Positions 7,701 through 42,000 of a stretch of DNA of 64,000 bases are shown here, piece after piece. This DNA is from Mobula hypostoma. Its lineage: Eukaryota. The first letter of the stretch is position 1. Each line of letters opens with the position of its first letter. A program made the position numbers and the translations under genes. Where the stretch lies: assembly GCF_963921235.1 (NCBI RefSeq), contig NC_086121.1, positions 20,832,001-20,896,000 on the forward strand. The letters are read 5' to 3'. The notes below the pieces were generated by a model that was not told where the DNA came from, did not search any database, and saw nothing but the letters and a program-made list of their open reading frames with translations.

Positions 7701-9237
7701 TTAAATTCTCACCATAGGGGGCCGACCTATCCAATCACCCATGCAGCTGGAATTCAAAAAGAGTTGTCAGTGGGATCTGAGCTCCCTCATGATATCAGAT
7801 TATTATTTCTCATAATGAACAAAGAGGTGAGATTTTAAACAAACCGCAGCAAGAATATTCCTGTTCGAATCTTTGCAATTTTTCTCCTATTTTTTTTATT
7901 TACTCGGTCGATTACTTTTGCTTTAGAATGCACACTTATTCATGTCGCAGGCGTGGAATATCCAAAGCCAGGAGTAAAGGAGATACAAGTAGAATGCGTA
8001 TAGACACTGGATTGAACCAAAGCAGACAGCATGCAGATGGAATGCAGAATACTCCCCCCACCACCCCACCCTGCCCCCAAACAAGGATGGGGGTAGAGCG
8101 GATACAGTACAGCTAGCCTTTCTGGCAAAGTTACGACAAAATTTGCAATCGGTTTCATAAGCAATAACCTTATTTAACCATAAAATGACACGTGCCCTGA
8201 AAGAAAAGTATGTGGCTGAACGAGAGGAGGGAATGAAAACATGGCGACTTGACACATTAAGATGGAGAGGAAAAAAAAGAAAGATAAAGAGACAGGGAGA
8301 AGAGGACAGAGAGAAAAAGTAAAAGACGAGGCAATGAATCATGTGGTGAGCAAAGAAAGGGGACAGTGGCAGCAGAGGAAGTAAGAGGCAAAGCTGATCT
8401 GAAAATGAGAGTTACATGGACAAAATAAGGGTGTAAAAGGAAATAGAAGGCAGGAAGGAAGTTATGTGGGAAAAGGAAAAGATGAAGGCTGGTAGACTGT
8501 AATGTATATACTGCTTATTTTGTATAACAAATGTCTAAGAGTATAAAAACAAGGCTAATTAAACGAAGAACAAATTAGAACAGGCAATCAAGGCTTTGAT
8601 CAAATATGTGGATTTCAAAGAAGATTTTAAAGAGAATATCTTTTTAAATGGAGAAGAAGTTGAGAGAGAAAAAAAATTTAACAATTACATTGGTGGTTGA
8701 AGGCAAAGGTAGTAAATGTGGGACAAGGAGGGGAATGTATCAACAATATGAAGGTTTGAAGAATTAAGTTACTAAATTAGAAAAAAAATGTTTCAGAGAT
8801 GGGAAGTGCAGGATTTAAATGTAGCAATGCAAGTTTTAAATTGAAAACTGTGAAAGACAGAGGGAATGGATGAACAGAACTTGCAAAGGAACAAAATATG
8901 GGTGGCAGAATTCTGGAGGACCACAGTTTTATGGAGGGTTGGAACTCAATGGTCAACTGAGACAGAATATTATGGAAAGACTGTAAAACTGTCTGTTTTA
9001 GGAAACCCCTTTTTGGTTTTATTATTTTTTTTTAAATTATGTCTTTCAAGAGAAATACAAACACTAGAGCCATCAATATTAGAGTTAGATTTTTCTAAAA
9101 TGTTACCATATTATTTTAATTTTAGTATGTTTTGTTTTAAAACTTCATTTTTGCCAGGTATGTCCAATGCTGGAGAATCTCTCCAGCTCATTTAAGATAA
9201 AAACCTATACACCAGAGCGTCCCCAAGTCCTGCTTAC

Positions 9238-9706
9238 CCTTGTTATGTCGTCCTCGCTCTCTCCGATTTTGCTTCTTGTGATCTCGGCTGTGTTTTCTCC
9301 CTTTATTTGCGGATTCCACCGTCCGGTAATTTTCTAACTCTCGGGGATAAAACTGGCCACTTTGATCCCCTGCTCCCTCCTCCAGCATGGCTGCTCTCTC
9401 TAGGCTGTCTGTCTCCACACGCACTGGTGTAAGGCTCTCCAGTCCTACGCCGTCTTCATCGGGTCTCCCGGCCTCCATCACTCTGGTCACCATAGTGCTG
9501 GCCTTCTCCTTCCTCAGTACGCCGTGTCTGCGGCCTGCTCTGGGCAGGTCTGGCCAAGAGTCGTGCCTCTTCAGACTGTGGTCGGTGTCGGGTGGCTGCA
9601 GTGAGCTCTTCTTATCCCTGGAGTCGGCCTCCAGAGCACAGACCTGGCTCAGAACGTCAAAAACCAAGATGAGGAGGAAAGGAGGCGTGAGGTACCACTG
9701 AGCCAT
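9238..9706 (-). CDS. DRAXIN: Draxin coding exon 1 (signal peptide and basic region)
   Basis: ATG at 9706 gives MAQWYLTPPFLLILVFDVLSQVCA (signal-peptide-like), GLESLTPVRVE and KGRKHSRDHKKQNRRERGRHNK. Acceptor ttcttcttcag opens the exon at 9724; donor G|gtaagc, phase 1. Confidence 0.9.
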
Positions 9707-11084
9707 TTTCTTTGTACGATTAAGCTGAAGAAGAAACAGGCAATACATTTGATTTAAAATGCTGATCGTGGTTTGTACAACATTCAGGCACGGATTAATG
9801 TTCAGCTCTAGATAGACAAAACACTCCCAGTAGTTTAGATGCTATAGTTTAGTGGGCATTGTATCTCAGCTGCTGGAAAGGGTTAGGAGTTCAAATGCCG
9901 TTTAGTTCCAGCTGATGTTATTGGAATGATTATGGGAGAAATCCAATTTGTTATAGCGTCCTTGGATGACGCTAAAACTGGGGAAACCAAACTCGGTTGT
10001 TATGCAATAACGCCCGCAGGACCCATTCCCCGGTGACAGATGGTGCCTTCAAGAAAGCCGTAAGGTCAAAATGGGGGGTGGCGGGGTTGGGGGGAGTTGG
10101 TAAAAACTGACCACTACACCCAGAGCTCAGCTATTACAATGCTCTCATCATCATCATCTGCTCCTGGCCGTCCTGCATTACAAAATAATTGCAGTAGTTC
10201 CCTCCCAACGCAAGGACAATAAATATCAGTCATGCACATACAAACAATACAGACAGGAGCATCCACTGTTGTAACCACAACACTAATATTTATTTCCCTA
10301 GAGTCGGGGAGAGGAAAATCAGGTGGGGCGTTTTGCCCTGGATAGTATTCAATGCTTCCAACTAGAAAACGCATATGTACCCGTGCATAAAACGAGGCCG
10401 GGTGTTTGTGTCACGAGTGATCCCACTCCGGGACATATGGTGGCTGAGCTAATGCATGCATGGAACTGTAGTCCATTGTAGGGGGTGGGGGAAATTTAGA
10501 AGGGAAAAAAAATCAATGTGATTGATGAATCAGGAGACTAGGCTTTAGAAACCATGACAAACGAGCACAATACAACACCGCACAATAGTTTTGATATTAA
10601 AATAGAAAGTGAGTATTCAAAATGCCGCGAAGGTAGTAGATTTGAAGGAGTGGCCATATTCTGAAATGTATGTAAATTTAACATCTCAATTCTTTAACTA
10701 GTATTTCCCCAGCCCACGGGGATAATATTAATTAATTACAACTTCCCGAGGGGACAGCCTCTCAACTCCCATCTGCTGTAGGACCAAACATTTCTTCCAG
10801 CAATTTGCAGCATCTTCCATTGTATAGACACACACAACACCGGCGCCCTACCCGCAACCCCCCCCCCCAACTCCCCTCCCCACCTCACCTCCGAAAATTC
10901 CACCTCTCCAAAATCATCTCCGCCATCATCTACGGAGCTTCAGCTTCCCCCCTCCCCCCCCCCGCAACAATCAGAATCACAAAGCATTGTTTTCCAAGTT
11001 TCGCAGGCATGTGCTTGACCTCCCGTCGGTATCCCCCGCGACTGATCAAATGTTGAATGCTCTGCCAAGGTGCCAAGGTCCCGC

Positions 11085-11635
11085 NNNNNNNNNNNNNNNN
11101 NNNNNNNNNNNNNNNNNNNNNNNNNNNNNNNNNNNNNNNNNNNNNNNNNNNNNNNNNNNNNNNNNNNNNNNNNNNNNNNNNNNNNNNNNNNNNNNNNNNN
11201 NNNNNNNNNNNNNNNNNNNNNNNNNNNNNNNNNNNNNNNNNNNNNNNNNNNNNNNNNNNNNNNNNNNNNNNNNNNNNNNNNNNNNNNNNNNNNNNNNNNN
11301 NNNNNNNNNNNNNNNNNNNNNNNNNNNNNNNNNNNNNNNNNNNNNNNNNNNNNNNNNNNNNNNNNNNNNNNNNNNNNNNNNNNNNNNNNNNNNNNNNNNN
11401 NNNNNNNNNNNNNNNNNNNNNNNNNNNNNNNNNNNNNNNNNNNNNNNNNNNNNNNNNNNNNNNNNNNNNNNNNNNNNNNNNNNNNNNNNNNNNNNNNNNN
11501 NNNNNNNNNNNNNNNNNNNNNNNNNNNNNNNNNNNNNNNNNNNNNNNNNNNNNNNNNNNNNNNNNNNNNNNNNNNNNNNNNNNNNNNNNNNNNNNNNNNN
11601 NNNNNNNNNNNNNNNNNNNNNNNNNNNNNNNNNNN
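11085..11635. other. Assembly gap
   Basis: Run of N. Confidence 1.
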
Positions 11636-11915
11636 ACTCATACACACGCGTACATACACACACACACACACAATACCAACATCCAGGGTTCAAACAGCGT
11701 ACGAACTTCGGCCCCTGCACAACTGGCTTTCCAATCCCCAGCACTTTAACAGAGAGAGAACAATCCTTTCCCAATGTAAACAAACTACCGACAATCAAAT
11801 CGATCATTTTAACAAGGTAATTGATGCTCAATGTTTGACAAACATCTTGGACTCCTTTTTTTTAGTTTGGAAGCAAATGATTTACAGATAGACCAACCAG
11901 AACACATACATTGAC

Positions 11916-12061
11916 NNNNNNNNNNNNNNNNNNNNNNNNNNNNNNNNNNNNNNNNNNNNNNNNNNNNNNNNNNNNNNNNNNNNNNNNNNNNNNNNNNNNN
12001 NNNNNNNNNNNNNNNNNNNNNNNNNNNNNNNNNNNNNNNNNNNNNNNNNNNNNNNNNNNNN
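11916..12061. other. Assembly gap
   Basis: Run of N. Confidence 1.
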
Positions 12062-13709
12062 CTCCAATAAATACAAATCATTCCGAAAATCGTCAGAGAG
12101 CCATTTACAGTTGAGTTGCAGGTGTCTTGAGATGCGACACGAGCCGAATAACATTCAAAGGCGCCGTTCGGCACCGAACACCACGCTGATCCGGACATCC
12201 TCCTTCCTACCTGTCTGTTTCTTGGGCTCAGGGCACAGAGAGCTGCCACTCCGGCAACCCGATAGAACCGAAGATTCAATATCTCCCAGACTGGGAAAGG
12301 AATAAGCATCCGCGCTCCCGGGCGCGTTCGCGACTATGATGTCAGCGATAGACAGGGGCGGGCACGAACAGAACGAATAGAGAAATGTCACAAGAGATAC
12401 AGTAAAGTAGAAATGAAGATAGGAATGGGGGTGTGTGGAGGTCGTGTCCAAGCAATGTTTTTTTTTGTCTTGAAGGTGAATGGAGATGGTCGATGGGGCT
12501 GGTCAGCAGGAGAGGCAACGCAATTGAAGAGAGCATGGATGGGAAACGTTGGATATGTAGAAGCGTTATTAGTTTGGCGACTGTGACAAGTGTGGTCGCC
12601 CAGGTAACGGGTGCAAGAACGGAATGTCTGAAATATTTTGGAAATATGCAAATAAACCCAAGAAATGCCTCGGAAAACAAGAGTTGGAAGGGCTTCGCGC
12701 TATAAATAGGCTGTTAGATGAGAGTGGACGAACGGTAGCGGATAAGAGTTTCACGTAGCTCACAGTGAGTACTGTGCTGTCATGGGAGTCTAATAAAAGG
12801 ACGATTGAGGACAGATGAACAAAGAGATGTGAGAGGATAGTTACTCAATTCAAAAAAAATAAAAGGTTAAGCAGTAAGCGCAAAAACCGCGAGGATTAAT
12901 GGCATATTGGTTTCAGTCAGGAGAGAGGCGATAATAAGTATGCGCCATCACACAAATTGTACTCTCGATCTGTATTTCATTAGTTCCGATAAAGCCCAGA
13001 AACAATTTATTGGAATGGGCCTGACCGGGAGAGATGGGTCTATCTATAGTGGAACTAGGCATAGTCCCTGACTGTTAAAGTACGATGCTGGACAGTCCGG
13101 AAGACGGGAACACAATCCTAATGTTCAGGCTTAGCAGTTAAATGCGATTGCAAATTTAAAAAACCGTTTTCATTCAAATTGATGTAATCAGAAGGGGAAG
13201 TTGCCGTGTGGATCGTAGATACCGTTAACTCATAATAGACGGCCAGGAAGTTGTGTAACATCAAAGCTGTCAGATGGCGGACATGCCGGCTTCTTCCCCT
13301 GCCTTTCTAGTCCTGAAAAGTCGGCTGTTTATTCCTCTCCATAGATGCTGCCTGACCTGCTGAGTTCTCCTAGCATTGTGTGTGCCCCTTTATTTTATTA
13401 TCTGTAGTAAATTGTGAGGAGAGAATTTTAAAAATGCAGCACAGAAGCAACTGTATGGACAACACCTTTCCTTAAACCTGGTTAAGGGTTGGGATACTTA
13501 AATGGCAATGGGGAGGGGGAAGTTAAACGGTAGTGATTTTGATTGTTTCTCTAACTAAAAGTTATCATGTTGAATTAATCTGCACAAATACAAACCATTC
13601 GGTTCACCCTATCTGCACTGGAAATCAGGGTTTATACAGGACCTAGTCCACCGCTTTTCAATTTCCCGTGTCAGCATATTCCTCCATCCCGTTATGCCTG
13701 TTTCCTCAA

Positions 13710-14280
13710 CTTTCTCAAGTCAGGTTCATTGTCCTTTAACGGTATACAGGTGCATGTACACCCCCAAACAGGTTTCTCCGGACCAGGGTGTGAAGCACGG
13801 TGGTACACATAACACACGATAACTTAGGAACGCAAGAATTAAAACATCAAATGAATTACGCATTGATTGGCAAGAAGTGCGTAAGTTAAGATTGTAGCGT
13901 ACAGTACAAAGTATCCGAGGCATTTCGAATGCGTTGCGGCCGGGAGTTCAGAAGCCTAGTGGCCTGAGGGAAGAAACTGTTTTCATCCTGATCGTTGTTG
14001 TCTTTACGCAACCGAGCCTCCGGCCTGATGGTAGAATGTCAGGGAGGATGCTGGATGGATGGGTGGGATCCTTGATAGTACCAAGGGCCCTGCGTACGCA
14101 ACGCTCCTGATAAATGCCCCCGATAGCTGGTACGGAGACACCACCCCCCCCCCCCGCCCGCATGGTTCTCTCAGCCGTTCTCACGGTCCTTTGTAGGGAA
14201 TTCCGGTCCAGTGTTCTGCTGCTCCCGTATCAGATGGAGGTGCCGGGTGTCGGGACGCTCTCAATGGTGCTCCTCAGTTA
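13710..14280 (-). mobile_element. Rex1/Babar LINE 3' fragment
   Basis: IYQERCVRRALGTIKDPTHPSSILPDILPSGRR. Confidence 0.75.
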
Positions 14281-14455
14281 AGATTCTGAAATTCATCTAA
14301 AATCGTACTGCGGGGGAGGAGGCCTTTACCGATCTGAACCTTTTATGAACGGCTTCTTTTAGTCTCCCTCCGAAACATAGACGGTTAATTTATCAACTTC
14401 TTCCATTGTTTTAAAAGATCACAAAAACAGAGGGAAGCGTGATTTATTATTTAGT

Positions 14456-14583
14456 CCCGCAGTAGTGTCTCGGCCCGAAACGTCGACTGTACTCTTTCCC
14501 ATAGATGCTACCTGGCCTGCTGAGTTCCTCCGGCTTTTTGTGTGCGTTGCTTTGGGTTTCCGGCATCTGCAGATTTCCTCGTG
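14456..14583 (+). mobile_element. Short Penelope-derived insert with degenerate hammerhead
   Basis: TCTCGGCCC-GAAAC-GTC-GACTG; flanked by direct repeat TTTATTATTTAGT (14443-14455 and 14584-14596). Confidence 0.75.
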
Positions 14584-14999
14584 TTTATTATTTAGTGGTT
14601 GGCTTGGCTCTCCATTCTGCAAATCTTTGAATGGTGGAATGGCGGGGTACCGAGGTCTTCAATAGAACTGTCCAATCAGGGAGTTCCGTCACTGCCTCTT
14701 TCCCAGCTGCTCAGTGTTTTTCCTTCTTAAACATTTATTCAGTTCTTTTTTGAAGGTTCCAACTGAATTTCCTACTGTCACTTTTTCACTCCTGCATTCC
14801 AAATGTGTATTGCCACTGCAGTAAAAATTTTGCACCCCACACACACAGTGCTCAATTTCAACAGCCAATGAAGTGAAACTTCATTTGGGATATTTGAAGG
14901 GCGGGGGAGGCATGTATCCTCATAATATTTGCGAAGTAACTAAATTAGGATTAAAAATGCCTCATCGCAGAATGCTGGGAAATGAGATTACTCCAGACA

Positions 15000-15562
15000 C
15001 TGCAGGGACCGCTTCCTTGAGTGCCTCCGTTCCATCCGCCTGAAGCGGAACTTCCCAGTGGCCGAACATTTTTAATTCCGATTCCCACTCCCGTTCCGAC
15101 ATATCGATCCACGGTCTCCTCTCCCGCAAAGATGAGGCCCAACTCAGGGTGGAGGACCAACACCTTATATTCCAACTGGGTCGCCTCCAACCTATGGTGT
15201 TAATATATGGGTTTCTCCTTCCAGTTAAAAAATCCTTCCCCACCCCTCCTCTTCTATTTCCCACTGTGGCCTCTTACCTGTTCTCACTGGCCTAACACCT
15301 CCGCCTGGGCCCCCTCCTCCTTCCCTTTCTCCTATGGTCCACTCTCCTCTTCTATCAGATTCATTCTTCGCCCGCCGATCCTTTATTTCTCCTTCCCACC
15401 CGGCTTCACCTGCCACCTTCTAACTCTCCTCCTTCCCCTTCCCCTCGCCTTTTTATTTTGACGTCTTCCCACTTCCATTCCAGTCCTGAAGACGGGTCTC
15501 GGCGGAAACATCTCCATCGACGCTGCCTGACCTGCTGGGTTTCTCCAGCACTTTGCACGTGT
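15000..15562 (+). mobile_element. Penelope-like element 3' end (GIY-YIG C-terminus, pyrimidine-rich UTR, degenerate hammerhead)
   Basis: Frameshifted RDRFLECLRSIR..FPVAEHF/NSDSHSRSDISIHGL..LRVEDQHLIFQLGRLQP; CAGTC-CTGAAGA..GAAAC at 15481. Confidence 0.8.
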
Positions 15563-16329
15563 TAGTGTAGATAGATACTTGACAGCTAAGACAAACACTA
15601 AGGTCTGAAAGGGCCCGTTTTCATGTTGCTTGACTTTGTGAATAGGTGAAGTTTCTTTACACAGTTACTGGAGAAATAGCTGCTTCACCTCAAGAGGTAG
15701 GTTGTTCAGGGAAAAGTTAGACGACCTTAACTGTCAAGAAGATAATGAACCGTTTATCGCAGAAATACTGAATTGAAGAGAAGAGACGGGGATAGAGGGA
15801 AGCTGAAGGAAAGGCGTCTGTCGAATGGCTAAGCAACCCATTTGAGAGACGCAATGCCCAAATAGCATATACACAGAAATTCCCAGATTCAATGAAGTTG
15901 CCTTGAGGAGGTGACGAAAGCAGGGCGTACAATTGCAATGTTTTACATTATCACCTGCCTGGATCATTTTTTAAGTATTCCCTCCTCGAAATTACAAAGT
16001 TGAAAATGGATCTGACATGTGCTTACAATCCTTTGAGACTACTCCACCATTCAGCAAGGTTATGGATGATATTCTACCTCACCCAATCGTCCCATTACCA
16101 TTCTAAAACCTTTTATTCCTGTAGGACCTATTCATGCATTTTTATAACTGATCCATATTCCTCTCATGTAATTTCAAAGACTCCTTTTCAATTCAATAAA
16201 GTCAAAGAAAGATGCAGCAGAATAGCAGGCCCTTCGGCCAGCGGGTCAGCAGCCACACATTTGCACGAATCATTTGTTAATCATATGGTAATTCCTTTTA
16301 TATTCTCCCCACGTTCTCATCAACTTTCC

Positions 16330-16470
16330 CAGGATCCTGCCGCTCACTTACACACTAGGGACAATCCACAGTGGTTTATATACCAATTTACCGATGTTTA
16401 TGGGAGGAAACCAGAGAACCCGGAGCAAACCCACGCTGTCACAGGGAGAATGTGCAAACTCGGAATGTGT
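16330..16470 (-). mobile_element. V-SINE-like fragment
   Basis: gggaggaaaccagagaacccggagcaaacccacgctgtcacagggagaatgtgcaaactc, the reverse complement of the V-SINE core as I recall it. Confidence 0.55.
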
Positions 16471-16899
16471 GAACCTGGGTTTCTGTTCCAGTGAGGCAAA
16501 GGCTTCATAAACCACACCTCTGTCACTTAAAGCCTTTATCTCGAACCATTGATTTTTGACTTGCAAATTAGCAGAACTATCCCATTTACTTCATCAAGTC
16601 CCCTAGGAGCTTTACATTGTTACTAAACTTATCTTTCGCCCTTCTACTCTAAATTATATTGCAACCTTATCATAATTAATCACAAGACACTGAAGATAAA
16701 CCGAGATCAAACTGTTGGATGCCTTCTCTGTCTTTAGCTACAAATAAAGACATAAGTATTTGTAGCGTATCTCCACTTCCATTTATTTATCAACCTAACC
16801 TCAGCTGTAAAGACCCGCATTTACCTTCTCTGAATTTTTAATGCAAAATTAATTTTCACCATCTATTTAGGGACCTTGCTCGTTTTCTGTCATATTCGT

Positions 16900-17350
16900 C
16901 TCCTTTTTACCGGTGTCGGGCTTGACACGGTGCCTGCTTCAAAGGGCTCCGAACTTGTGGCTGAGCTCTGGTTGGCCGCCTCTCTGTGACGGAGGCTCAG
17001 GGACGGGGCCATCTGATCGGAGGGGCACGCAAGCTGGTGACGTCACGACGCACGGTGTCAACCGAAGTGGCCGCAGGGCCGCTAGCCGAAGGTCGGTTTG
17101 GAGAGAGGGCGGTTGATGGTCGTCGTCGTCTCGGTGTGGGAGGGGGGCTCGGGGCGGTCGTGCTCGGCGGGGTTGGCGGCTCGCGGCCTAGCCCGGTCGT
17201 GCTCGGGTGCTCCCTCAGGTCGCGGCCTAGGCCACTGACAGGCGGGACCGGGGGGTGAAGGGGAGCTGGGAGCTGCAGGGCTGCGGATGGAGTCAACACT
17301 GGGGCTGTCGACTGTGAGCGGACACTTGGTGCTCGGAATGAGAGGGGGAA
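16900..17350 (+). promoter_or_regulatory. CpG-rich MAD2L2 promoter with CRE/ATF site; probable non-coding first exon
   Basis: CpG-dense segment ~1 kb before the ATG; palindrome GTGACGTCAC at 17037-17046; candidate donor AAG|gtcggt after 17091. Confidence 0.65.
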
Positions 17351-18040
17351 GGTGAAGAGCGAGCTCACTCCTTATCCAGTTCAGTGACCTGACTGCGATC
17401 TCCCTCCACCACGCCTAAACACATCAGGAGATAATTCCTTTGTTACTGAAGCTGCACATCACTGATCCTAACCGCATTGACACCACCGGACACTCTATGA
17501 TCACACCATCAGGAATGGAATTCAAATAGCTTCTTCCGATGTCTCTTGAATGAAAATGTTTGCCAATATTCCAGAAGCGAATATGATGTAATTTGCAATT
17601 AGTTTTCTCTCTTTTTCCTTTCTATAAATATTCATAACTGCTCCTTTAAAGTGCCTTGAGGATTTTCTACAGTGTAAATACATGCACATTTTGTTCCATA
17701 TCTACTTCAGACTTTATTTCATATAATTCTTTATTTTGTAGAATTGTTGAATTTTTTTGTAACACCAACACACCACAGCAACTTTCTGATCCGTGTAAAT
17801 GTATATGATAAATAAAGTTCGTCTTACATAGTCCAAACTATACTTCTGTTAGAAATGGGACACATAATTATTTATTTACTTTTTATTTATTTGTTTATTT
17901 TCTTTCTATATTATGTATTGCATTGAACTGCTGCTGCTAGGTTAACAAATTTCATGATAATAAACCTGATTCTGATTCTACTGGTTTTATTAAATCATGC
18001 TGTTCTGACCAATTGTAATATTCTCTAGGTATTTGTGAAG

Positions 18041-18080
18041 ATGGCCACTCTCACACGACAAGATCTCAATTTTGGACAAG
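18041..18080 (+). CDS. MAD2L2: MAD2L2/REV7 coding exon 1
   Basis: MATLTRQDLNFGQ; acceptor at 18027-18028; donor gtgcag. Confidence 0.95.
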
Positions 18081-18430
18081 GTGCAGTTTAAAATATTTTA
18101 ACCAAAGCAACTCGTACCGCTTTGCGTGAATCTTAGATGATAAACATTTTTTTTCTGATCATTTGTTTGTATTTAATTCTATCCCTGCAAACAGGTAGTT
18201 TGCTGGGGAGATTGTTGGACAGTCATTGATCCTGATGACAATGCATGAATTTTCAGATTGTGATAAGGAGCAGAAATCGCTCCCAGCCCCAGGTGGTTAA
18301 ATCCTTTAGTAGGATGTATTCTAAATTTTGTATGTTCCTGTTTCCATTGCCTGGCTTTCCAGGCTGCACACTATAAACTGCACTGGCACAATCTTACACC
18401 CAGTGAACTGCGGATCTTTTCTTTCTCCAG

Positions 18431-19080: not shown

Positions 19081-19152
19081 ATGTCGTGTCACCCAGAGCT
19101 TAACCAATACATTCAGGATACTCTGCACTGTATCAAGCCTTTGATTGAGAAG
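19081..19152 (+). CDS. MAD2L2: MAD2L2 coding exon 3
   Basis: [24 protein letters not shown]. Confidence 0.97.
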
Positions 19153-19764: not shown

Positions 19765-22700
19765 ACCATAAGATATAGGAGCAGAATTAGGGCATTTGGC
19801 CCATCGAGTCTGTTCTGCCATTTCATCATGGCTGATCCAGTTTTCCTCTCAGCCCCAGTCTCCAGCCTTCTCCCCATATCCCTTCATGCCCTGAACAATC
19901 AAGAATTTATCAACCTCTGCCTCAAAAATACACAGAGACTCGGCCTCCACAACTGCCTATGGCAAAGAATTCCGCAGATTCACCACTCTCTGGCTAAAGA
20001 AATTCTTACTCATCTCCGCTCTAAAAGGACTTCCCTCTATTTTGAGGCTGTGTGCTCTGGTCTTAGACTCTCCCACCATAGGAAACATCCCCTCCACATT
20101 CACTCTAACAAGGCCTTTCATCATTTGATAGGTTTTGCTGAGGACACTCCTCATTCTTCTGAATTCTCGTGAATACTGGCCCAAAGCCATCAAACGCTCT
20201 TCATATGTCAAGCTATTCGATCCTGGAATCTTTTTCTGAGCCTCTTTTGAACCCTTTTTCAGTACATCCTTTCTCAGATGAGGGGCCCAAAACTGCATAT
20301 AATACTCCAAGTGACGCCTCACCAGTGCTTTATAAAGTCTCAACATTACATCCTTGCTTTTATATTCCAGTCCTCTTGAAATCAGAATCAGAGTCCTTTA
20401 TTATCGCCAAGTATGTGGACACATACAGGGAATTTGAAGCAGGGAAAATGAATGCTAACATCCCACCCCGGACTCAACCTGAAAATTAACCTTTAGGGAA
20501 TCCTACAGAAGAACTCCCAAATACCTTTGTGCCTCAGTTTTTTGTATTTTCTCTCCATCCTCTCATTTCTTCTACATGTCCTGACACCATATTCCATCTG
20601 CCATTTCTTTGCCCATCTCCTAATATGTCTAAGTTCTTCTGTAGCCTCTCTACTTCCTCAAAACTACCTGCCCCTCCACCTACCTTCATATCGTCTGCAA
20701 ACTTTGCAACAAAGCCATCAATCCCATCATCCAAATCAATGACATATAACATAAAAAGAATTGATCCCAATATAGACCCTGCGGAACACCACTAGTCACC
20801 AGTAGCCAACCAGAAAAGGCTCCCTTTATTCCCACTCTTTGCCTCTTGCCAATCGGCCAATGTTTTACCCATGCTAGAATATTTCCTGTAATATCATGGG
20901 CTTGGAGATTGTTAATCAGCCTTCCGTGTGGCACCTTGATAAAGCCCTTCTGGTCCAGGTGACCTATCTACCTTCAGACCTTTCAGTTTCCCAAGAACCT
21001 TCTGACTAGTTACGGTAACTTCACACACTTCATGACCCCTGACACCTGGAACTTCCACCATACTACTAGTGTCTTGCACAGTGAAGACTGATGCAAAATA
21101 TTTATTCAGTTTGTTTGCCATTTTCTTGTCCTCTATTACTACCACTCCAGCGCTGATTCCCAGTGGTCGGATATTTACTCTTGCCTCTCTTTTATACTTC
21201 ATGTATCTGAAGAAACTTTTGGTTTCCTCTTTAATAGCGTTGGCTAGGTTACTTTTACTTTTACGTTCTTAATGACATTTTTAGTTGCCTTCTGTTGATT
21301 TTTAAATGTTTCCCAACCCTCCCACTATTTTTAGCTCTATTATATGAGCTCTCTTTGGCTTTTATATTGGCTTTGACTTCTGTTGTTAGCCATGGTTGTG
21401 ACATCTTTCCTTTAGAATACTTCTTCCTCTTTGGGATGTATACAGTATATACTGTGCCTTCTGAGTTGCTTTCAGAAATTCCTGCCATTGCTGCTCTGTC
21501 ATCATCCCTGCCAGTGTTCTTTTCCAATCAGTTCTGACCAACTCCTCTCTCATGCCTCTGTAATTCCCTTTACTCCATTGTAATACTGACACATCTGACT
21601 TTAGCTTCTCATTCTCAGATTTCAGGGTGAATTCGATTATATGATCACTTACCCCTAAGTGTTCTTTTACCTTAAGCTCTCTAATCAATTCTGGTTCATT
21701 GTACATCACCCTATCCAGAATAGCTGATCCCCTAGTGGGCTCAACCATGAGCTGCTCTAAAAAGCCATATTGTAGGCACTCTAGAAGTTCACCCTCCTGG
21801 AATCCAGCACCAACCTAATTTTCCCAATCTACCTGCATATTGAAATCCCCCATGACTATTGTAACATTGCCCTTTTGCTGTGCATTTTCTATCTCCCATT
21901 GTAATTTATAGGCCACATCCTTACTACTGTTTGGGAGTCTGTATACAACTCCCATCAGGGTCTTTTTACCCTTGCAGTTCCTTAGCTCTATCCACTATGA
22001 TTCAACACCTTCCAACCCTATGTCACCTCTTTCTAATGATTTCACTTTTTACCAACAGGGCAATGCCATACCCTCTGTCTTCCTGCCTGTCCTTTCAATA
22101 CAACGTGTATTCTTGGATATTAAGCTCCCAGCTACAATGTTCTTTCAGCCATGATTCATTGATATCTACAACATTATACCTGCCAATCTGCAACTGTGCT
22201 GCAAGTTCATCTGCCTTATTACATATACTGCGAGCATTCATATATAACACGTTCTTTCCTGTATTCATTCTTTTTGATTTTGTCTGCCGTTTACGTGGCA
22301 ACTCATCCTGTTGACTGCAATTTCGCCCTATCAACAGCCTCTCCTCACTACACATTGCCTCTGTTTGTAAACCAGCTACCTCATCTTCAGCACCATTATC
22401 CACTTTTTCTATGATACTACTTGTATTGAAATATATGCAGCTCAGGACACTAGTCGCACCATGTTTAACCTTTTGAATCCTAACTTTGTCTGAGGTTTTA
22501 TCAACATCTGCCTCCACAACCTCTCCACTAACTGTTCTGACACTCTGGTTCCCATTCCACTGCAGCTCTAGTTTAAACCCCACAACGCAGCATTAACAAA
22601 CCTTCCTGCTAAGATATTAGTCCCCCTCCGGTTCAGGTGCAAACTGTTCTTTCTGTACAGGTCCCACCTTCCCTGGAAGAGAGCCCAACATTCCAAAACC

Positions 22701-23090: not shown

Positions 23091-23456
23091 GAAGAAAAAC
23101 TAATGTTTTGGAACGCCAGCTATCTCCAAGCACATCGTCTGAAATTTGGACATCCAATGCTCCTTTCTCATTCAAGTCCTAAGAGTTTTTTTCCTACTGC
23201 CATTTGGAAATAACTTTGTACGGAGAGCAAAATTTCTAGGAGATTCACCACTTGACATTTTACTTAGGGATAAGTAATTGGTGTAACTTGGCTAGCTCAG
23301 AACAATTATGTAAAAGGTCAATGCAAGTCGTTTTTTTTTTCTGTTACCTATTCTGTTAACAGTACACCAGTGTATTTGCAGAAACTGTAATTTGAAAGAA
23401 CTTATCACTCCTCTCCCCAATATTTTTTGATTTTTGTTTTAAATATTTGGATGATT

Positions 23457-23617
23457 TTAAACGCAAACAACAGGAATTCTGCAGATGCTGGAAATTCAAG
23501 CAACACACATAAAAGTTGCTGGTCCTGACGAAGGGTCTCGGCCTGAAACGTCGACTGCACCTCTTCCTAGAGATGCTGCCTGGCCTGCTGCATTCACCAG
23601 CAACTTTTATGTGTGTT
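23457..23617 (+). mobile_element. Penelope-derived insert with 5' inversion and hammerhead core
   Basis: TSD ATTTGGATGATT (23445-23456 and 23618-23629); 22-bp inverted repeat (23502-23523 and 23596-23617). Confidence 0.85.
23519..23557 (+). ncRNA. Minimal type-I hammerhead ribozyme motif
   Basis: TGGTC-CTGACGA-A-GGGT(CTCG)GCCT-GAAAC-GTC-GACTG; predicted cleavage after 23552. Confidence 0.65.
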
Positions 23618-23688
23618 ATTTGGATGATTGCTTGGTTGAGATAAGCATTTTATGTGTTGTGACCTGCTCCATTTTGTTCTGTCTTTAG

Positions 23689-23789
23689 AATGAGGTGGAT
23701 CGGGTGGTGGTGGTGATCCTGGATAAAGAGCATCATCCTGTGGAGCGCTTTGTCTTTGAGATATCTCAACCTCCTCTGCTGTCTGTCAG
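23689..23789 (+). CDS. MAD2L2: MAD2L2 coding exon 4
   Basis: [33 protein letters not shown]. Confidence 0.97.
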
Positions 23790-26004
23790 GTGAAACATTT
23801 TCAGTATTCTGTATTCCTGTACTACTACTGCATGTGACTAAACTATTAATCTTAATCTGAAGCTCGTTACACTTAATGAAGACAATTCTCCCCATATTCT
23901 GAATCTGTCTACATTACAAATAGAATATCCTGTGTAATTATTTGGTTAGAACATAATTAGATTTCTACACATCGTAACCTTAACATGCTTTCTGCACAAC
24001 CCAATCAAGAAAAAGATAAAACAATTAAATGAGAGTGAATTGGTGCAATTTCTCAGTGGTGAAACCAGAATATATTTTGATTGGCGATGTTTCGAAAGTC
24101 TTCTGGTACTGCTGCTTGTATTACAAGATCTGTGAAGAGTGGTGCAATGGATTTATTTCTATGTCTATGTTAGAATTGTTCTAGATTTTTCCCTGGCAAA
24201 ATTTGATTTCTAAGGTACCTTTACTTCAATGTAAAATAATAGTTTCCCGTAAGAATATCTTGTGATTCTTGGGCAACATGTCTAAAGTAGCTTAATTTGG
24301 GTCAGAAGGTGTATTGTGTGGAAGAAATGGAATGGTGTGCTGTTTCTTCATGCTACTTGAGGTTTGTAAACTAGTGAGCTGTTGTGCCGAGGGCTGATGT
24401 ACTTTAGCGCACTAGTTTCTGCTAGTGCGCTCTGACGGTGGACTGACAGTCACAGAAGTCTGCAGTGCAACAGGTGGCGATTTTGAACACTGCTTCTGCC
24501 AGCTCTTCGAAACGGCTGCTTAGTTGGTCCCTCGCCCTTGCTTTCCTCCGCACACCCCTCATAACCTTGTAAACTCATCCTCTATGAATACATCCAGAGT
24601 GGCTAAGGGACCTGACTTCCACTTTTCCACAGGTCTTGGCTACCTTCTGTGCAGAAATTTCTCCATGTTCCTTCTTATTATTTTGTCAGTCTATAAACTC
24701 TTGTGATTGCTTTATACAGCTGCAACCACATGAACCTTTCATGTATTCTGTCTGAGGAAAACTCTTTTTTTCCATTAGTATGCGGGCAAAATTGCACCTG
24801 TGAGTTGTTGCATTGGGAACAAGTGCACTAGTGAACTGTGGGACTGACTATCAACTACTGTGGGTTTATTGTCTGACTTTCCTTATTTTGTAGCTTAAAT
24901 AACCATTGAATAAAATGGATCTGAATTTCTGAAGTGAGAAATAGAAGTAACTGGAAACTGAATTGGTGCAAATGACCAATAGAAGTAAGAACAAGTACTG
25001 ACACAGATGTTTGCCCCAAAACATTGTCAGTTTATTCCCCCCACCCCACACCTCTGCCAACCACCAGATGCTGCTCAGCTGGCTGCATTCCTCCAGCAGA
25101 CTGTTTATTGCTCCAGATTCCAGCATCGATAGTCTCTTGTGTCTCTATGAATAAGAAAAGGCCATTCAGCTCCTTGGATGTACTCCACCATTCAGTAGAA
25201 TCATGGCTGATTGATTACTAAGATGTAATAGCACGTTTGGAAAATCAACCAGATGAAGCAAGGACAGCATTGCTTCATGAAGGAGCTATTGTGTCTGACA
25301 TATTAAAGTTCTTTAGAAGAAGTCTCAACCAAAGTTAGAGGGGAAGCAATACATGTACCTGGAAGTCCAGAGGACATTTGACAAGATGCTTGGTGAAATA
25401 TTTATGTCACAACTTGAGAACCCATGGTGTTGGAGGTAATATTGGCATGGATAAAGGATTAGGTAACAGCTAGGAGCTAGCAAGTAGAGATGGGGGAGTT
25501 ATTGAAGGTGGCAAACGTATGAAGTTTATAGGTAGGCTGGGAGAGTAAGGAAAAAAGGTTGGCAAATGGAACATAATGTGGGAAAATGTGAACATTGGTT
25601 CTGGAAGGAAGAGCAAAAGATTTCTAAGAGAGAAAAAAAGTTGCCCAAATCCGCAGCATGAAGTACCGAAAGCTGGCACACGAATGCAGCAGGTATTAAG
25701 GAAAACTGGTGGAATATAGTCTGGGGATGTTTCCTGTCATGGAAGAGACTGAAGCCAGAGGGCATGATCTCAGAAAAGGAGTGGAGGGTGAGAGATAACT
25801 GGTAAACTCTTCCAGTACACTCAATATAAGTTTCTTAACTCATGAGTCTATGCAAGTCCTTGGTTCAGGGGACTTACTTAGGGAAGAATAATAAATGCAG
25901 TTATTAACAGTGCTGTTAGAATTCCTTGAATGGATATATATATATATATATATATAAAAGGCTTGAAAATGCAATCAAGTTTCACAACTGAGAAGCGACA
26001 AAAT

Positions 26005-28135: not shown

Positions 28136-30194
28136 TTGTACCAGTGAATCCATTTCTTGCTTCTGTTACTGGACTCTGAATGGAGCTCAGTGGTGGAATG
28201 CAGACATGATGGGAAAACTTTAAAAAAAAACTGCAACTGCTGGAAATCTGAAATGAAAACAAAACGCTGGAAAAATTCAGCAGGCTAGGAAAGAGGAAGA
28301 GGTAATGTTTCAGATTTAGGACTGTTCATTAGAACTGATGAGGATTTGGGAAACCCATCTCTGCAATTATGTGCCAGCAAAACTGGTATAAAGTCAGAGA
28401 TCAGGATTTCCAACCTGAAAGTGAGGGAGGAAGAATATTTAAAATTTTATTTTCTTATTTTACTTTGTTTAAATGTTTTTATTTATTATGTCTGGAATGT
28501 ATTTTAATTACTTTTAAAATTTAAAACTTTTTGTAATTATGGTATTTTAATAGTCTCTGAACATCAGATGTATTGAAACTCCTACAGAGCTTTACAGTCT
28601 TTGAGAGGAGCTGAGGCTCTGCCATCTACCTGCTGTCAAAATCCGCTGGAGTTTGAGGGCAAGGCCTCGGGTATTGGCTTACCTTCTCTTTGCCAGACCA
28701 TTCTGGGAGTAGTGAATCCTTGTAAGCTTGGGGAAGAGTATGACTGGTGTATGGTTGAATTCAGTGCAATGTGGAAGTTGTTAACACAAAATAAGGGCAA
28801 ACTAGTTTTGGAGCAATAGAGGACTGGTAAGGGATGATGTAGAGGAGGAATAAATGGGTGATTTTCAAGATGTAAACAGTCTGTCAGGGTTCTGCAAGAA
28901 TGTACTCTGGGATTTTGGTTATTTACAATACATTTTATGATGTAGATGAAAGAATAATGTATTAGTTTAAATCTGTATGGGAAAGTAAACTGTGAAGCAG
29001 ATACAGCTTTAAGGATGGGTTAAGTGAACAGGAGACGGTGGTGTTGCAAATTATGATGTTCATCATTTGACAGGCAGACCAGAAATCCAGTGGCCCATTG
29101 AGCGCTGATCTGTTTTAATGCTGTTGGTCTGGGGAGAAAATTACTGAAATACTGGAGGAGGGGGAATACAGAAGAAGTCATTGAAACTTACCAGCTTGCT
29201 GAATGCAGCCGTGGTGTTTGCATTCACTCAGCCAGTGAACGTGGAGTTCAGCGTATGAGAACATACAGTAATAATCCCATTTCACCTATTCAGTTAGCAC
29301 ATTTGTTCCCAGGAATACATCCTGAGTAATAAGATACTAGTTTAAATGTTAGTGTTCAGTTGGTTTGATGGAGCAGTGGGTTTGGTGTGTGAAACACCTA
29401 GGCCCATCAAGTAGTTGGGAAGGCAACAGCAAGTTCACTTTTGAGAGGTGTTTGTCTACGTATGGGGATGTCTTTCTGCAATGGCTACTTTGAGACTTCA
29501 TTTGGAGTACTATCTGCATTTTCGTTTCTGTAGAAAATTATACCTGGAAATGATACATTTGGATTCACTGAGTTGATCTCTGGGACGTGAAGATTGTCAT
29601 TTAAGGATTGATAGAGTAACTTTTATCCATTGGAGTCCTGAATTATAGAGATGATCTCATTGTAACACAAAGGATCTGAGTGGGATTGGCAGGTACGTGG
29701 CAAAAAGCTGGGTTTTTTTGGCACGTAACTGACAATCTCTCTCAGATCCTTTGGAGTGCCAAGAACTAAGAATCATAGCTTCAGGATAAAGGTTCACTAT
29801 TTAGTTCTGAGAAGAGGAAGTCTTCACTCAGGGGGTTGTAAATCTTGGCAGTTTATATCAGTGGAAAACGGTTGTTCAGTTGAGTGCAATCAAGACAGAT
29901 TTTAAAATATTTTTAGTTGAGAGGTTTTTTTTAAAAAAGCAAATGATTGAGCAGGAGAGAGCACCAGTGCTGCTTTTTGGATTATTGATTTTGATTTTTT
30001 ATTCGTAACTTTTGCTGCTGTTCCAGAAGTTTGAGAGATTTAACGGGCCAGCAATTGAGCCTGGTATGTTCCAGGGCGTCTGACTCAATGCCAGGATTAA
30101 TAAGTCATGCTAACGGGGGAGTATGAGAGTTTCAAGAGCTGTGTTGTAGTGCTTCCTGTGTCTGCTGGATCTGAATAGTGCTGTTTATTTCTAG

Positions 30195-37509: not shown

Positions 37510-38688
37510 TCAGTGACGAGCCTTCGTCACATTACCTCCCTCCTCTCCTGCAGCAGCAATGTTTGGCAGTCTTGACAGGAAGTCCACTGTGATGTTCTCC
37601 TTGCCTGCTTTGTGCGGCACACAGAACCTGAAAGGTTGAAGTTCCAGGTACCACCCAGTCACCCTGGCATTCTGATCCTTCATTGTCTGGATCCAGGTCA
37701 GGGCTCTGTGGTCTGTCTGGAGGTCAAACTCCCTCCCAAGAAGGTAGTACCTGAGGCTGTCCAACGCCCACTTGATTGCCAGACACTCCTTCTCGATTGT
37801 GGAGTACCAGGTTTCACAGGGCAGAAGTTTCCTGCTGAGATATAACACAGGATGTTCCTCACCTGGCTCTCCCTGAGCCAGTACTGCCCCGATGCCTACA
37901 CCTGAGGCATCCACCTGCACCAGGAAGCGGTGTTCAAAGTCAGGACTCTGCAACACAGGGGAAGAGCACAATTTCTCCTTCAGGCCCTGGAAAGCACTTT
38001 CACACCCCTCTCTCCATTCCACAGGATTTCGGGCCAACTTGTAGGTGAGGTTGGTCAATGGGGCTGCCAGGGTTGAAAAGTGAGGGATGAACCGTTGGTA
38101 CCAGCCCACTAGGCCAAGAAGAGACTGGACCTGGGTCTTGGTACGGGGCCTGGGGCTGTTCAGAATGGCCTCAACTTTATCCACCTGAGGCCAGACTCCT
38201 CTCCCCAACTGATAGCCCAGGTAGCAGGTTTCCTGCCTGGCCCACTCACACTTCTGCAGATTGAGTGTAAGTCCTGCTGCATTGATTGCACCTGGGTCTC
38301 GACAGAGGTGCTCCAGATGTTCCTCCCAGGTCAGGCTAAAAATAACCACATCATCAAAATAGGCGGCGCCGCAGTCCTCACAACCTTGTAGCACTCTGTC
38401 CATAAGCCTCTGGAATGTGGCTGGGGCACCATGTAAGCCAAAGGGTGTCACCGTGAACTGAACGAGGCCTAGAGGGGTCCTGAATGCAGTGAGGGGCTGG
38501 GACTGGCTCTCCAGGGGGACCTGCCAATACCCCTTGCAGAGGTCCAAGGTGGTGATGTAGTAGTTGGCTCTCCCAATCCTCTCCAGCAGGTCCTCAATCT
38601 GGGGCATCGGGTAGGCATCGAAAAATGAGATGGCATTCAGTTTCCTAAAGTGAATGCAAATGCGAAGAGTTCCATCCGTCTCCGGCAC
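37510..38688 (-). CDS. Truncated Gypsy pol (RT and RNase H), 392-aa ORF
   Basis: LDLCKGYWQ, PFGLHGAPATFQR, YFDD, VDASGVGIGAVL, YSTIEKECLA, TDHRAL; the ORF runs into the 3' LTR. Confidence 0.85.
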   Translation of the reverse strand: MPETDGTLRICIHFRKLNAISFFDAYPMPQIEDLLERIGRANYYITTLDLCKGYWQVPLESQSQPLTAFRTPLGLVQFTVTPFGLHGAPATFQRLMDRVLQGCEDCGAAYFDDVVIFSLTWEEHLEHLCRDPGAINAAGLTLNLQKCEWARQETCYLGYQLGRGVWPQVDKVEAILNSPRPRTKTQVQSLLGLVGWYQRFIPHFSTLAAPLTNLTYKLARNPVEWREGCESAFQGLKEKLCSSPVLQSPDFEHRFLVQVDASGVGIGAVLAQGEPGEEHPVLYLSRKLLPCETWYSTIEKECLAIKWALDSLRYYLLGREFDLQTDHRALTWIQTMKDQNARVTGWYLELQPFRFCVPHKAGKENITVDFLSRLPNIAAAGEEGGNVTKARH

Positions 38689-39078
38689 AATGACAATAGG
38701 TCCGCTTGATGCTGGAGTTGGGAGTCATCGAACTGTCTGAAAGTGAGTGGAGTAGCCCTATTGTCATTGTGCCGAAGAAGAATGGAACTCTTCGCATTTG
38801 CATTGACTTTAGGAAGCTGAATGCCATCTCATTTTTCGATGCCTACCTGATGCCCTGAATTGAGGCTCCAGTCTCCAAGAAGGTGTGGGTTTGAATCCCA
38901 CCGCTGCCACCATATGTCACAAAAAACTGTGGGTCAATTGTTTAAGAAAAATAACAAGATAGCTTGAGTCACAAAACTAGATTGAGGTGCTTTTATTTAT
39001 CTCAAAACAAAAACTGGAAAAAAAAACAATATATATCCACCCTCAGACTAAACACAAAAGAAAACTAACCCCAAAGCC

Positions 39079-39838
39079 TGTCTGTCTGTCTGTCTGTATC
39101 TTGTTTTACAGCGGTTGGCATCCAGCTTAATGGTGCATTACTGCCACCTTCTGCTCCAGAATGTGCACTAGACATACAGTCTGAATCCCTTCACCCAATC
39201 GCGCACGCGCGCACACATTATATATATATATACAAACCTACACTTTACCCTCCCATCTTTGACCATCCTAGTATCCTATTCCTGTTTATTCATCATATTC
39301 TATAAAAAACCCCTGTACCCCTTAAAAACACTAAAAATACCCAGACTTGTGCTCTCTCACCCATGCCCAGCAACCCTTTTAATGTGAATTCCTGCATCCC
39401 CAATTCCCTTAATTTATTTCTCATCATCTCTCTCTGTATCCCATACTTCCTGCAACACAAAACTACATGTTCTACCGACTCCTCTTCCTGACATTCCTCA
39501 CACAATCCTGTCTGGTGTTTCCCTATCATTTTCAATGTTTTGTTTAATGCACAATGCCCCAGCCTTAACCTAGTCCACACAATTTCCTCTCTTCTGTTTC
39601 CATTACCTACCCTAGTAACTGCAACACTCTTTTGTATTTGATATAAATGCCTCCCTTTCCCCTCCCTGTCCCATCTTTCTTGCCACATTCGGTTGACTTT
39701 TTCCCAGATTACACACTTAACCTCTGCTTTACTGATACTAATGTGCATTTCCACATTTTCTTTCTTTAATGCCCTCTTTGCCAACTCATCCACCCTCTCA
39801 TTCCCCTTCACCCCTACATGTGCTGGAACCCATAGAAA
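39079..39838 (-). mobile_element. Nimb/I-clade LINE 3' fragment (RNase H) inserted in the 5' LTR
   Basis: WVPAHVGVKGNERVDELAK, RLRLGH, C-x2-C..H..C; (CAGA)n tail. Confidence 0.85.
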
Positions 39839-41820: not shown

Positions 41821-41842
41821 CAGGGTGGTCTCTGAGCTGTAT

Positions 41843-41911
41843 CGTCCCTGGGTGGGCTCGAACCATCAACCTTTCGGTGAACAGCCGAACACGCTGACTG
41901 CGATATTGCGC
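41843..41911 (-). pseudogene. tRNA-Asn(GTT) relic
   Basis: - strand reads GCGTGTTCGGCTGTTCACCGAAAGGTTGATGGTTCGAGCCCACCCAGGGACG, near-identical to vertebrate tRNA-Asn. The 5' acceptor strand is lost, the D-arm has insertions, and there is no CCA or T-run. Confidence 0.85.
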
Positions 41912-42000
41912 ACGTTATAAACCTGAAATACCTCGCTGGGATTTTCTGCACTAGTAGCCCAGATGTTAATAATTCGCGGTGAGGACCACTTTTTTAGAGG

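What the first reader, a model, noticed from the sequence alone, without database searches (positions are those of the whole stretch)
23445..23629. Hammerhead ribozyme core in a fold-back Penelope-derived insert, sense-oriented ~137 nt upstream of a MAD2L2 exon
Seen: CUGACGA, stem II (GGGU/GCCU), GAAAC and GUC, with stem I UGGUC/GACUG. The motif is enclosed by a perfect 22-bp inverted repeat and a 12-bp TSD. Known: Penelope-like elements carry minimal type-I hammerheads that lack a stem III loop and are thought to cleave as dimers. Inference: the long flanking stem could stabilise stem I, so REV7 pre-mRNA could be cut near a 3' splice site. This is the only copy in the window with an intact core.
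Basis: partly seen in the sequence, partly recalled or inferred. Interest (0 to 1): 0.7.

Follow-up and report, generated by a model that had tools for sequence, protein, structure and literature searches.

The report
Dead Penelope scrap with hammerhead motif
A 160-base hairpin-shaped scrap of a Penelope-like jumping gene, carrying that element's usual stripped-down hammerhead ribozyme motif, sits in an intron of the ray MAD2L2 (REV7) gene; it looks like an ordinary by-product of insertion, and its own hairpin should block the ribozyme fold, not help it.

Summary
All the motif parts, the perfect 22-bp inverted repeat, the 12/13-bp target duplication, the sense orientation and the 137-nt distance to a MAD2L2 exon are at the stated coordinates. 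It is the only complete hammerhead core in the window.

The insert is two 3'-end pieces of one dispersed repeat family joined head to head. One is a 93-nt direct arm that starts at the ribozyme's edge and lacks the tail. The other is a 67-nt inverted arm that carries a ~45-nt tail. This is the published shape of Penelope-like element (PLE) insertions. The little skate orthologous intron has an empty site.

The functional idea is not supported:
- The inverted repeat uses four of the five stem I 5' bases.
- In the full insert, stem I pair probability is at most 0.001, and the ribozyme-competent fold costs about 13 kcal/mol.
- The motif has no helix III.
- The conserved G10.1-C11.1 pair is G·U here.
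- Published single minimal PLE hammerheads did not cleave in vitro.

No Rfam hammerhead model matches.

Earlier notes of this scan report many such motifs and fold-back inserts elsewhere in this genome. Verdict: ordinary, low interest.

The parts
23445..23456 (.). Left copy of the target-site duplication (12 nt; 13 nt if T23444 is counted)
   Evidence: family D1
23457..23523 (-). Inverted arm: 67 nt of the repeat family's 3' end read on the minus strand. It comprises the ~45-nt 'tail' (23457-23501) plus 22 nt shared with the direct arm.
   Evidence: its reverse complement aligns with the 3' ends of the copies at 14457-14584, 1-98 and 25045-25148
23524..23616 (+). Direct arm: 93 nt of the same family. 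It starts at the 5' edge of the hammerhead motif and ends at the tailless 3' end. The junction with the inverted arm has a 2-nt microhomology, GT 23522-23523.
23520..23557 (+). Minimal hammerhead motif. Stem I 23520-23524/23553-23557; CUGACGA 23525-23531; unpaired A23532; stem II 23533-23536/23541-23544 with loop CUCG; GAAA 23545-23548; C23549-G23550 palindrome in place of helix III; U23551; C23552 (cut site after it).
   Evidence: Architecture compared with PMC4209133.
23502..23523 (.). Left arm of the perfect 22-bp inverted repeat; overlaps stem I bases 23520-23523
23596..23617 (.). Right arm of the perfect 22-bp inverted repeat
23618..23629 (.). Right copy of the target-site duplication
   Evidence: Little skate has a single copy of this target.
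23689..23789 (+). MAD2L2 (REV7) coding exon, residues 88-120 of P0001, with AG acceptor and GT donor
19084..19152 (+). Preceding MAD2L2 coding exon (residues 65-87 of P0001), which bounds the 4.5-kb intron that holds the insert
14456..14583 (+). Sibling copy of the family. It is 5'-truncated inside the hammerhead box, has the tail, and is flanked by a 13-bp target duplication 14443-14455 / 14584-14596.

Best explanation
This is a dead-on-arrival insertion made by the copying machinery of a Penelope-like retrotransposon (PLE).

Proposed mechanism (inferred): the element's endonuclease made a staggered cut at an AT-rich site with ATT at both ends, and reverse transcription was primed on both DNA strands.
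- One cDNA started at the tailless start site and ran 93 nt, to the 5' edge of the hammerhead motif. This is the direct arm.
- The other started about 45 nt further 3', at the tail end, and ran 67 nt. This is the inverted arm.
- The two were joined at a 2-nt microhomology.
- The 22 nt copied by both arms became the perfect inverted repeat.

The hammerhead motif is a passenger carried in from the parent element.

As RNA in the MAD2L2 intron, I expect the 22-bp stem to form and sequester most of stem I. The motif also lacks helix III, so a single copy has no way to build the active three-way junction. The most likely outcome is no self-cleavage and no effect on REV7 expression.

Shown here: the anatomy, the family membership, the empty site in a related species, and the fold competition. 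Inferred: the dual-strand priming and the lack of activity.
For: Anatomy:
- The reverse complement of 23457-23523 and the direct arm 23524-23616 both align to the 3' part of the same dispersed family.
- Copies end at two alternative places 36-46 nt apart. Tailless: 13285-13386, 15465-15566 and the direct arm. Tailed: 14457-14584, 1-98, 25045-25148 and the inverted arm.

Match to published PLE features:
- The optional 30-40-bp tail, often at one end only, and the adjacent inverted 5'-truncated copy are described as typical of PLE insertions (PMC8557442).
- The tail equals the stretch between two RT start sites. An anole PLE protein cleaves at ATT and extends both DNA strands in vitro (PMC11167929).
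- The target duplication here starts and ends with ATT.

Insertion status: the little skate orthologous intron runs straight across the insertion point with one copy of the target. The alignment score is 101 for the empty-site model against 66.5 with the insert (species from 10.64898/2026.10.27.761883).

Inactivity:
- In the full insert, stem I pair probability is at most 0.001. The competent fold is about 13 kcal/mol worse, an ensemble fraction of about 1e-10. Stem I reaches 0.5-0.6 only in the nascent RNA, before the right arm is made.
- Chimeric stem I is -2.9 kcal/mol, against -4.7 for the native CAGUC/GACUG.
- No hammerhead family of Rfam matches, even at E up to 10.
- Single minimal PLE hammerheads gave no detectable cleavage, and dimers only low cleavage (PMC4209133).
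- The anole PLE hammerhead needs the element's protein, and no RNA-seq reads end at its cut site (PMC11167929).
Against: - All invariant core bases are present, so activity is not excluded by sequence.
- Nearest-neighbour folding ignores the tertiary contacts of the hammerhead core and any protein help.
- During transcription there is a short interval, 43 nt between the cut site and the right arm, in which stems I and II are predicted to form.
- PLE transcripts with the same palindrome could in principle supply the other half of helix III in trans.
- No RNA data could be consulted.
'Penelope-like' therefore rests on the motif, the tail signature and the insertion shape.
Confidence: 0.85

Rival explanations
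1. One reading: the motif is an active intronic ribozyme. The flanking stem holds stem I together, and the REV7 pre-mRNA is cut 137 nt before the acceptor, lowering or regulating MAD2L2 output.
For: The core is complete and in sense in the intron. Stems I and II are predicted in the nascent RNA before the right arm appears. Amniote introns hold conserved, active type I hammerheads thought to derive from such retroelements (PMC6155905). A PLE hammerhead can be activated by the element's protein (PMC11167929).
Against: The flanking stem competes with stem I instead of extending it. There is no helix III. The 10.1-11.1 pair is G·U, not the conserved G-C (PMC4209133). Single minimal motifs are inactive in vitro (PMC4209133). 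The insert is absent from the skate ortholog, so there is no sign of conservation. Earlier notes of this scan report other sense intronic copies in neighbouring genes, which suggests such copies are tolerated passengers (unverified).
Confidence: 0.04
2. The insert matters through its RNA structure or splice signals, not through catalysis. The 22-bp hairpin lies 72 nt before the acceptor, and a 3' splice-site-like run (23560-23570) could alter splicing of the next exon, be edited, or feed small-RNA pathways.
For: The fold is very stable: -55.8 kcal/mol, z -4.2. A pyrimidine run ending in AG lies at 23560-23570, in sense.
Against: The pyrimidine tract and the likely branch region of the true acceptor lie downstream of the insert and are conserved with skate. 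A 22-bp stem with a 72-nt loop is not a typical microRNA precursor. There are no expression data.
Confidence: 0.05
3. The fold-back is itself a small non-autonomous mobile unit (retrozyme-like) that is copied as a whole, not a one-off insertion by-product.
For: Non-LTR retrozymes derive from PLE terminal repeats (10.64898/2026.07.22.740005).
Against: No second copy of this junction exists in the window. There is a single unit, not a tandem array, and only one arm has the ribozyme. The arms end exactly at the two known start sites, as expected for a fresh event.
Confidence: 0.05
4. The hammerhead-like motif is a chance match.
For: The core boxes are short. No Rfam model matches.
Against: There is one match against 0.07 expected. 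The same block is found at the same position in sibling copies. It fits four independent features of the published minimal motif.
Confidence: 0.01

Closest known systems
Minimal hammerhead motifs (min-HHR) of metazoan Penelope-like elements (Cervera and De la Pena 2014, PMC4209133)
   Same: CUGANGA and GAAA boxes; cut after GUC; a 5-bp helix I; an unpaired base between positions 9 and 10.1; no helix III, only the palindromic C15.2-G16.2; carried near the 3' end of a dispersed retroelement. The anole Poseidon element has the same GAAACGUC block (template sequence printed in PMC11167929).
   Different: Helix II is only 4 bp (7-8 bp in the Schistosoma mansoni PLE families, 6 bp in Drosophila virilis). 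The 10.1-11.1 pair is G·U in this copy. Two bases of helix I come from the inverted arm, not from the native element.
Complex PLE insertions: an inverted 5'-truncated copy next to the unit, with a 30-40-bp tail at one end (PMC8557442; mechanism in PMC11167929)
   Same: Two arms in inverted orientation, both starting from the element's 3' region; the tail on one arm only; target duplication; AT-rich target.
   Different: A miniature version: 67 + 93 nt, with no coding part at all. The tail is about 45 nt.
Conserved intronic hammerheads of amniotes (RECK, CTCL, DTNB; Rfam HH9/HH10; reviewed in PMC6155905)
   Same: A type I hammerhead, in sense, inside an intron of a protein-coding gene, probably of retroelement origin.
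   Different: Those have the canonical type I hammerhead architecture with loop-loop tertiary contacts and are conserved across classes. This one has no helix III and no loop 1, is absent from the skate ortholog, and does not match the HH9/HH10 models.
Non-LTR retrozymes of animals (PMC7229834; 10.64898/2026.07.22.740005)
   Same: Short non-coding units with type I hammerheads, related to PLE terminal repeats.
   Different: Retrozymes are tandem arrays, which allow dimeric ribozymes and circular RNAs. This is a single unit with a fold-back.
Twin priming of LINE-1 (5' inversions; from my own knowledge, Ostertag and Kazazian 2001)
   Same: Both strands of the staggered break prime cDNA synthesis, giving an inverted 5' part joined at a microhomology.
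   Different: In L1 the inverted part comes from further 5' in the RNA. Here both arms start at the element's own 3' start sites, so they overlap and form a perfect inverted repeat.

Membership tests
PLE minimal hammerhead (min-HHR) | Core boxes CUGANGA ... GAAA ... UH in the type I order | tested here: met
   23525-23531, 23545-23548, 23551-23552
PLE minimal hammerhead (min-HHR) | [quoted passage not shown] | tested here: met
   A23532; feature listed in PMC4209133
PLE minimal hammerhead (min-HHR) | Conserved G10.1-C11.1 pair | tested here: not met
   G23533 faces U23544, a wobble. The sibling copy at 14457 has C at that place.
PLE minimal hammerhead (min-HHR) | No helix III; palindromic 15.2-16.2, allowing a dimer | tested here: met
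   GAAA-CG-UC at 23545-23552
PLE minimal hammerhead (min-HHR) | Lies in the terminal repeat of an element that encodes RT plus GIY-YIG endonuclease | tested here: inconclusive
   The family shows the PLE tail signature and insertion shape.
PLE minimal hammerhead (min-HHR) | Self-cleavage (as a dimer or with protein) | not testable with these tools
Rfam hammerhead families (type I RF00163, HH9, HH10, type II, type III) | Match to the covariance model | tested here: not met
   No match at gathering score over the window, nor at E up to 10 over 23380-23700. This is expected for a motif without helix III.
PLE insertion | Target-site duplication and variable 5' truncation, no poly(A) | tested here: met
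   12/13-bp duplication here and 13 bp at the 14456 copy. Copies start at different points and none ends in an A run.
PLE insertion | Optional tail of some tens of bases: two alternative 3' ends | tested here: met
   Three tailless and four tailed ends, 36-46 nt apart; compare PMC8557442 and PMC11167929
PLE insertion | Adjacent inverted 5'-truncated copy | tested here: met
   Inverted arm 23457-23523
Non-LTR retrozyme | Tandem head-to-tail repeats of the ribozyme unit | tested here: not met
   A single unit; no second core within the window
Functional intronic hammerhead (HH9/HH10 kind) | Conserved at the orthologous site in related species | tested here: not met
   Empty site in the little skate MAD2L2 intron
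Functional intronic hammerhead (HH9/HH10 kind) | Fold competent as a single molecule (stable helices I-III) | tested here: not met
   No helix III. Stem I probability is at most 0.001 in the full insert.

The most novel reading that the evidence does not exclude
The sense-strand minimal hammerhead is cut at a low rate in the nascent MAD2L2 intron. This would happen in the short interval before the right arm of the hairpin is transcribed, helped by PLE protein or by pairing in trans with abundant PLE transcripts. Active Penelope expression would then impose a cost on, or regulate, host genes that carry such copies in sense.
Probability: 0.03. Interest if true: 0.6.

Novelty: new member of a known kind. 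Interest (0 to 1): 0.12.

Why it matters
It matters little as it stands. It is one more copy of a known motif in a known kind of insertion, in a genome that, by earlier notes of this scan, holds very many of them.

Its small value is as a clean, dated example. With an empty site in the skate, it shows that both arms of a PLE fold-back start at the element's two reverse-transcription start sites. That is what the in vitro finding of priming on both DNA strands predicts.

If the motif did cut the REV7 pre-mRNA, it would link transposon activity to a DNA-damage-tolerance gene. The evidence here points away from that.

Tried and rejected
- Rfam at gathering score over the whole window, and at E up to 10 over 23380-23700: no hammerhead family.
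It was replaced by exact-box scans and an nhmmer profile.
- An energy evaluation of the two-molecule 'double hammerhead' failed, because that topology is a pseudoknot in dot-bracket form. No dimer energy is reported.
- The first coding exon of MAD2L2 was not found in the window. I cannot say whether the sense copies at 13-15.5 kb lie in the same transcript. The runs of N were left alone.
- A paper search for intronic hammerheads by gene name gave nothing useful; a review was used instead.
- Considered and rejected: chance motif, retrozyme, microRNA-like hairpin (see rivals).

Full report
**The observation.**
- Stem I is UGGUC (23520-23524) with GACUG (23553-23557).
- The box CUGACGA is at 23525-23531, followed by one extra A (23532).
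- Stem II is GGGU/GCCU (23533-23536, 23541-23544), closed by CUCG.
- GAAA is at 23545-23548, then C, then GUC at 23550-23552. The predicted cut falls after C23552.
- A perfect 22-bp inverted repeat (23502-23523 / 23596-23617) and a 12/13-nt direct repeat (23444/5-23456, 23617/8-23629) enclose it.
- The spaced core pattern occurs once in the window, against 0.07 expected. A looser scan of both strands finds no other complete core.

**The gene context.**
- The exon 23689-23789 has AG and GT borders. Its translation matches REV7/MAD2B chains of the PDB at E 1.5e-12.
- A full-length relative, P0001, was found with the exon peptide. It places seven coding exons on the + strand between 18430 and 35770.
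- The insert lies in the 4.5-kb intron between exons 19084-19152 and 23689-23789, in sense, with the cut site 137 nt before the acceptor.
- The first coding exon was not located in the window.

**What the insert is.** A search of the window with the 160-nt insert (23457-23616) finds partial copies at 1-98, 13285-13386, 14457-14584, 15465-15566 and 25045-25148. A profile search adds a weak one at 28227-28289.

In those copies, the sequence homologous to insert bases 76-160 is followed, in the same orientation, by the reverse complement of insert bases 1-58. The alignment makes the structure plain.
- Bases 23524-23616 are a direct arm. It begins at the 5' edge of the hammerhead and ends at a GTGTGT run.
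- Bases 23457-23523, read on the other strand, are a second piece of the same family. It starts 22 nt before that run and continues about 45 nt beyond it.
- The 22 nt present in both arms are the perfect inverted repeat.
- The arms meet at a 2-nt microhomology (GT, 23522-23523).

Copies of the family end at either of two places 36-46 nt apart. Three ends are tailless and four are tailed, counting the two arms. The copy at 14456-14583 is 5'-truncated inside the hammerhead box and has its own 13-bp target duplication. None ends in poly(A).

**Comparison with Penelope-like elements (PLEs).** Craig et al. describe PLE insertions as highly 5'-truncated. They often have an inverted 5'-truncated copy adjacent, and a 30-40-bp tail often present at only one end (PMC8557442).

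Frangieh et al. show the following for an anole element (PMC11167929):
- The tail is the stretch between two internal start sites of reverse transcription.
- The protein cuts at ATT.
- Unlike R2 and L1, it cleaves and extends both DNA strands, using the same start sites on both.

The insert is what that predicts. One cDNA is primed on each strand, each starts at one of the two start sites, and both are truncated early and joined. The duplicated target here begins and ends with ATT. Dual-strand priming for this particular event is my inference.

'Penelope-like' therefore rests on the motif, the tail signature and the shape.

**Insertion status.** P0001 is encoded in assembly GCA_028641065.1, the little skate.
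- Its orthologous intron aligns with the window from 23623 through the exon at 75% identity.
- When the insert and one copy of the repeat are removed from the window sequence, the alignment continues across the insertion point into the left flank. The score is 101, against 66.5 with the insert left in.
- The skate therefore has an empty site with a single copy of the target.
- The same repeat family is present elsewhere in the skate locus. The family is old, but this insertion is specific to the ray lineage.
- The two target copies and the two repeat arms show no difference over 35 paired bases. This sets only a loose upper bound on its age.

**Is it a PLE minimal hammerhead?** Cervera and De la Pena (PMC4209133) define the motif by five features:
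- the core boxes;
- a helix I of 4-5 bp;
- an unpaired base between positions 9 and 10.1;
- a conserved G10.1-C11.1 pair;
- no helix III, only a palindromic 15.2-16.2.

This copy meets all but one. Its 10.1-11.1 pair is G·U, whereas the sibling at 14457 has C at 11.1.

Its helix I is partly accidental. Sibling copies read CAGUC before the box, giving five Watson-Crick pairs with GACUG (-4.7 kcal/mol). Here U23520 and G23521 come from the inverted arm, giving two wobble pairs (-2.9 kcal/mol).

No Rfam hammerhead model matches. That is expected for a motif without helix III, and it also separates this motif from the HH9/HH10 intronic ribozymes of amniotes.

**Does the flanking stem help?** No. 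The left arm of the repeat ends at 23523 and stem I starts at 23520, so four of the five stem I bases are claimed by both.

| RNA folded | Stem I pair probability | Stem II pair probability |
|---|---|---|
| Full insert, alone or with 60-80 nt of flank | at most 0.001 | about 0.06 |
| Nascent RNA ending before the right arm | 0.5-0.6 (four innermost pairs) | 0.6-0.7 |

- In the full insert, the minimum-energy structure forms the whole 22-bp stem and pairs the core region otherwise.
- The best structure with both stems formed and the core open is -42.9 kcal/mol, against -55.8 for the minimum. That is about 1e-10 of the ensemble.
- Only 43 nt separate the cut site from the right arm, so the favourable interval during transcription is short.
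- Even in isolation, the 48-nt motif prefers to pair GACG of the box with CGUC.

These are nearest-neighbour estimates. They ignore tertiary contacts and proteins.

**Published activity of such motifs.**
- A single minimal motif from Schistosoma showed no detectable self-cleavage. Dimers and trimers cleaved weakly, mostly at non-physiological magnesium (PMC4209133).
- The anole PLE hammerhead cleaved only when the element's protein was added. Mutating it did not affect insertion in vitro, and no RNA-seq reads began or ended at its cut site (PMC11167929).
- In Xenopus, about 43% of retrozyme-related sequences overlap introns (10.64898/2026.07.22.740005). Intronic copies are therefore commonplace.

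**Earlier notes of this scan.** These are unverified leads. For the same genome, which one of them calls a devil ray, they report:
- very many minimal hammerheads on Penelope tails;
- several fold-back inserts with a one-sided tail;
- sense intronic copies in two other genes.

These agree with my reading. I did not rely on them for any step.

**What could not be done.** Cleavage in vivo, splicing of the flanking exons, and polymorphism of the insert are untested.

**Verdict.** The functional inference is contradicted by the anatomy and the folding, and is unsupported by the literature. This is an ordinary, probably inert, by-product of PLE integration.

Noticed in passing
window 23560-23570: The insert carries a pyrimidine run ending in AG (CCTCTTCCTAG) in sense, 118 nt before the true acceptor of the MAD2L2 exon. 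Sibling copies have a similar ...CCATAG at that place. It could act as a cryptic 3' splice site.
   Followed up: no
window 1-98, 13285-13386, 14457-14584, 15465-15566, 23524-23616, 25045-25148 (+); 28227-28289 (-): Six of seven copies of the repeat family in the window lie on the + strand, the sense strand of MAD2L2. The number is too small to mean much.
   Followed up: partly
L001:6002-6032 and nine other places in L001: The little skate MAD2L2 locus (12 kb) holds about ten fragments related to the same family. One has a near-complete hammerhead box, in sense, in a different intron.
   Followed up: partly
window 14443-14596: A 128-bp sibling insertion with a perfect 13-bp target duplication (TTTATTATTTAGT). 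It is truncated inside the hammerhead box and has the tail.
   Followed up: partly
window 1-18430: The first coding exon of MAD2L2 (residues 1-23 of P0001) was not found upstream of 18430, although in skate it lies about 570 bp before the second exon. Runs of N at 11085-11635 and 11916-12061 were left alone.
   Followed up: partly
window 20082-20089 (+) and 25726-25733 (-): Two stretches around GAAACATC share longer similar flanks (..CTCTGG..CT.AG.CTCT..C..AGGAAACATCCCC..). They probably belong to another dispersed repeat unrelated to the hammerhead family.
   Followed up: no
window 37510-49786 (-): Several long open reading frames on the minus strand (392, 281, 434, 199 aa) lie where first-reader notes place a Gypsy-type element. 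Not examined here.
   Followed up: no
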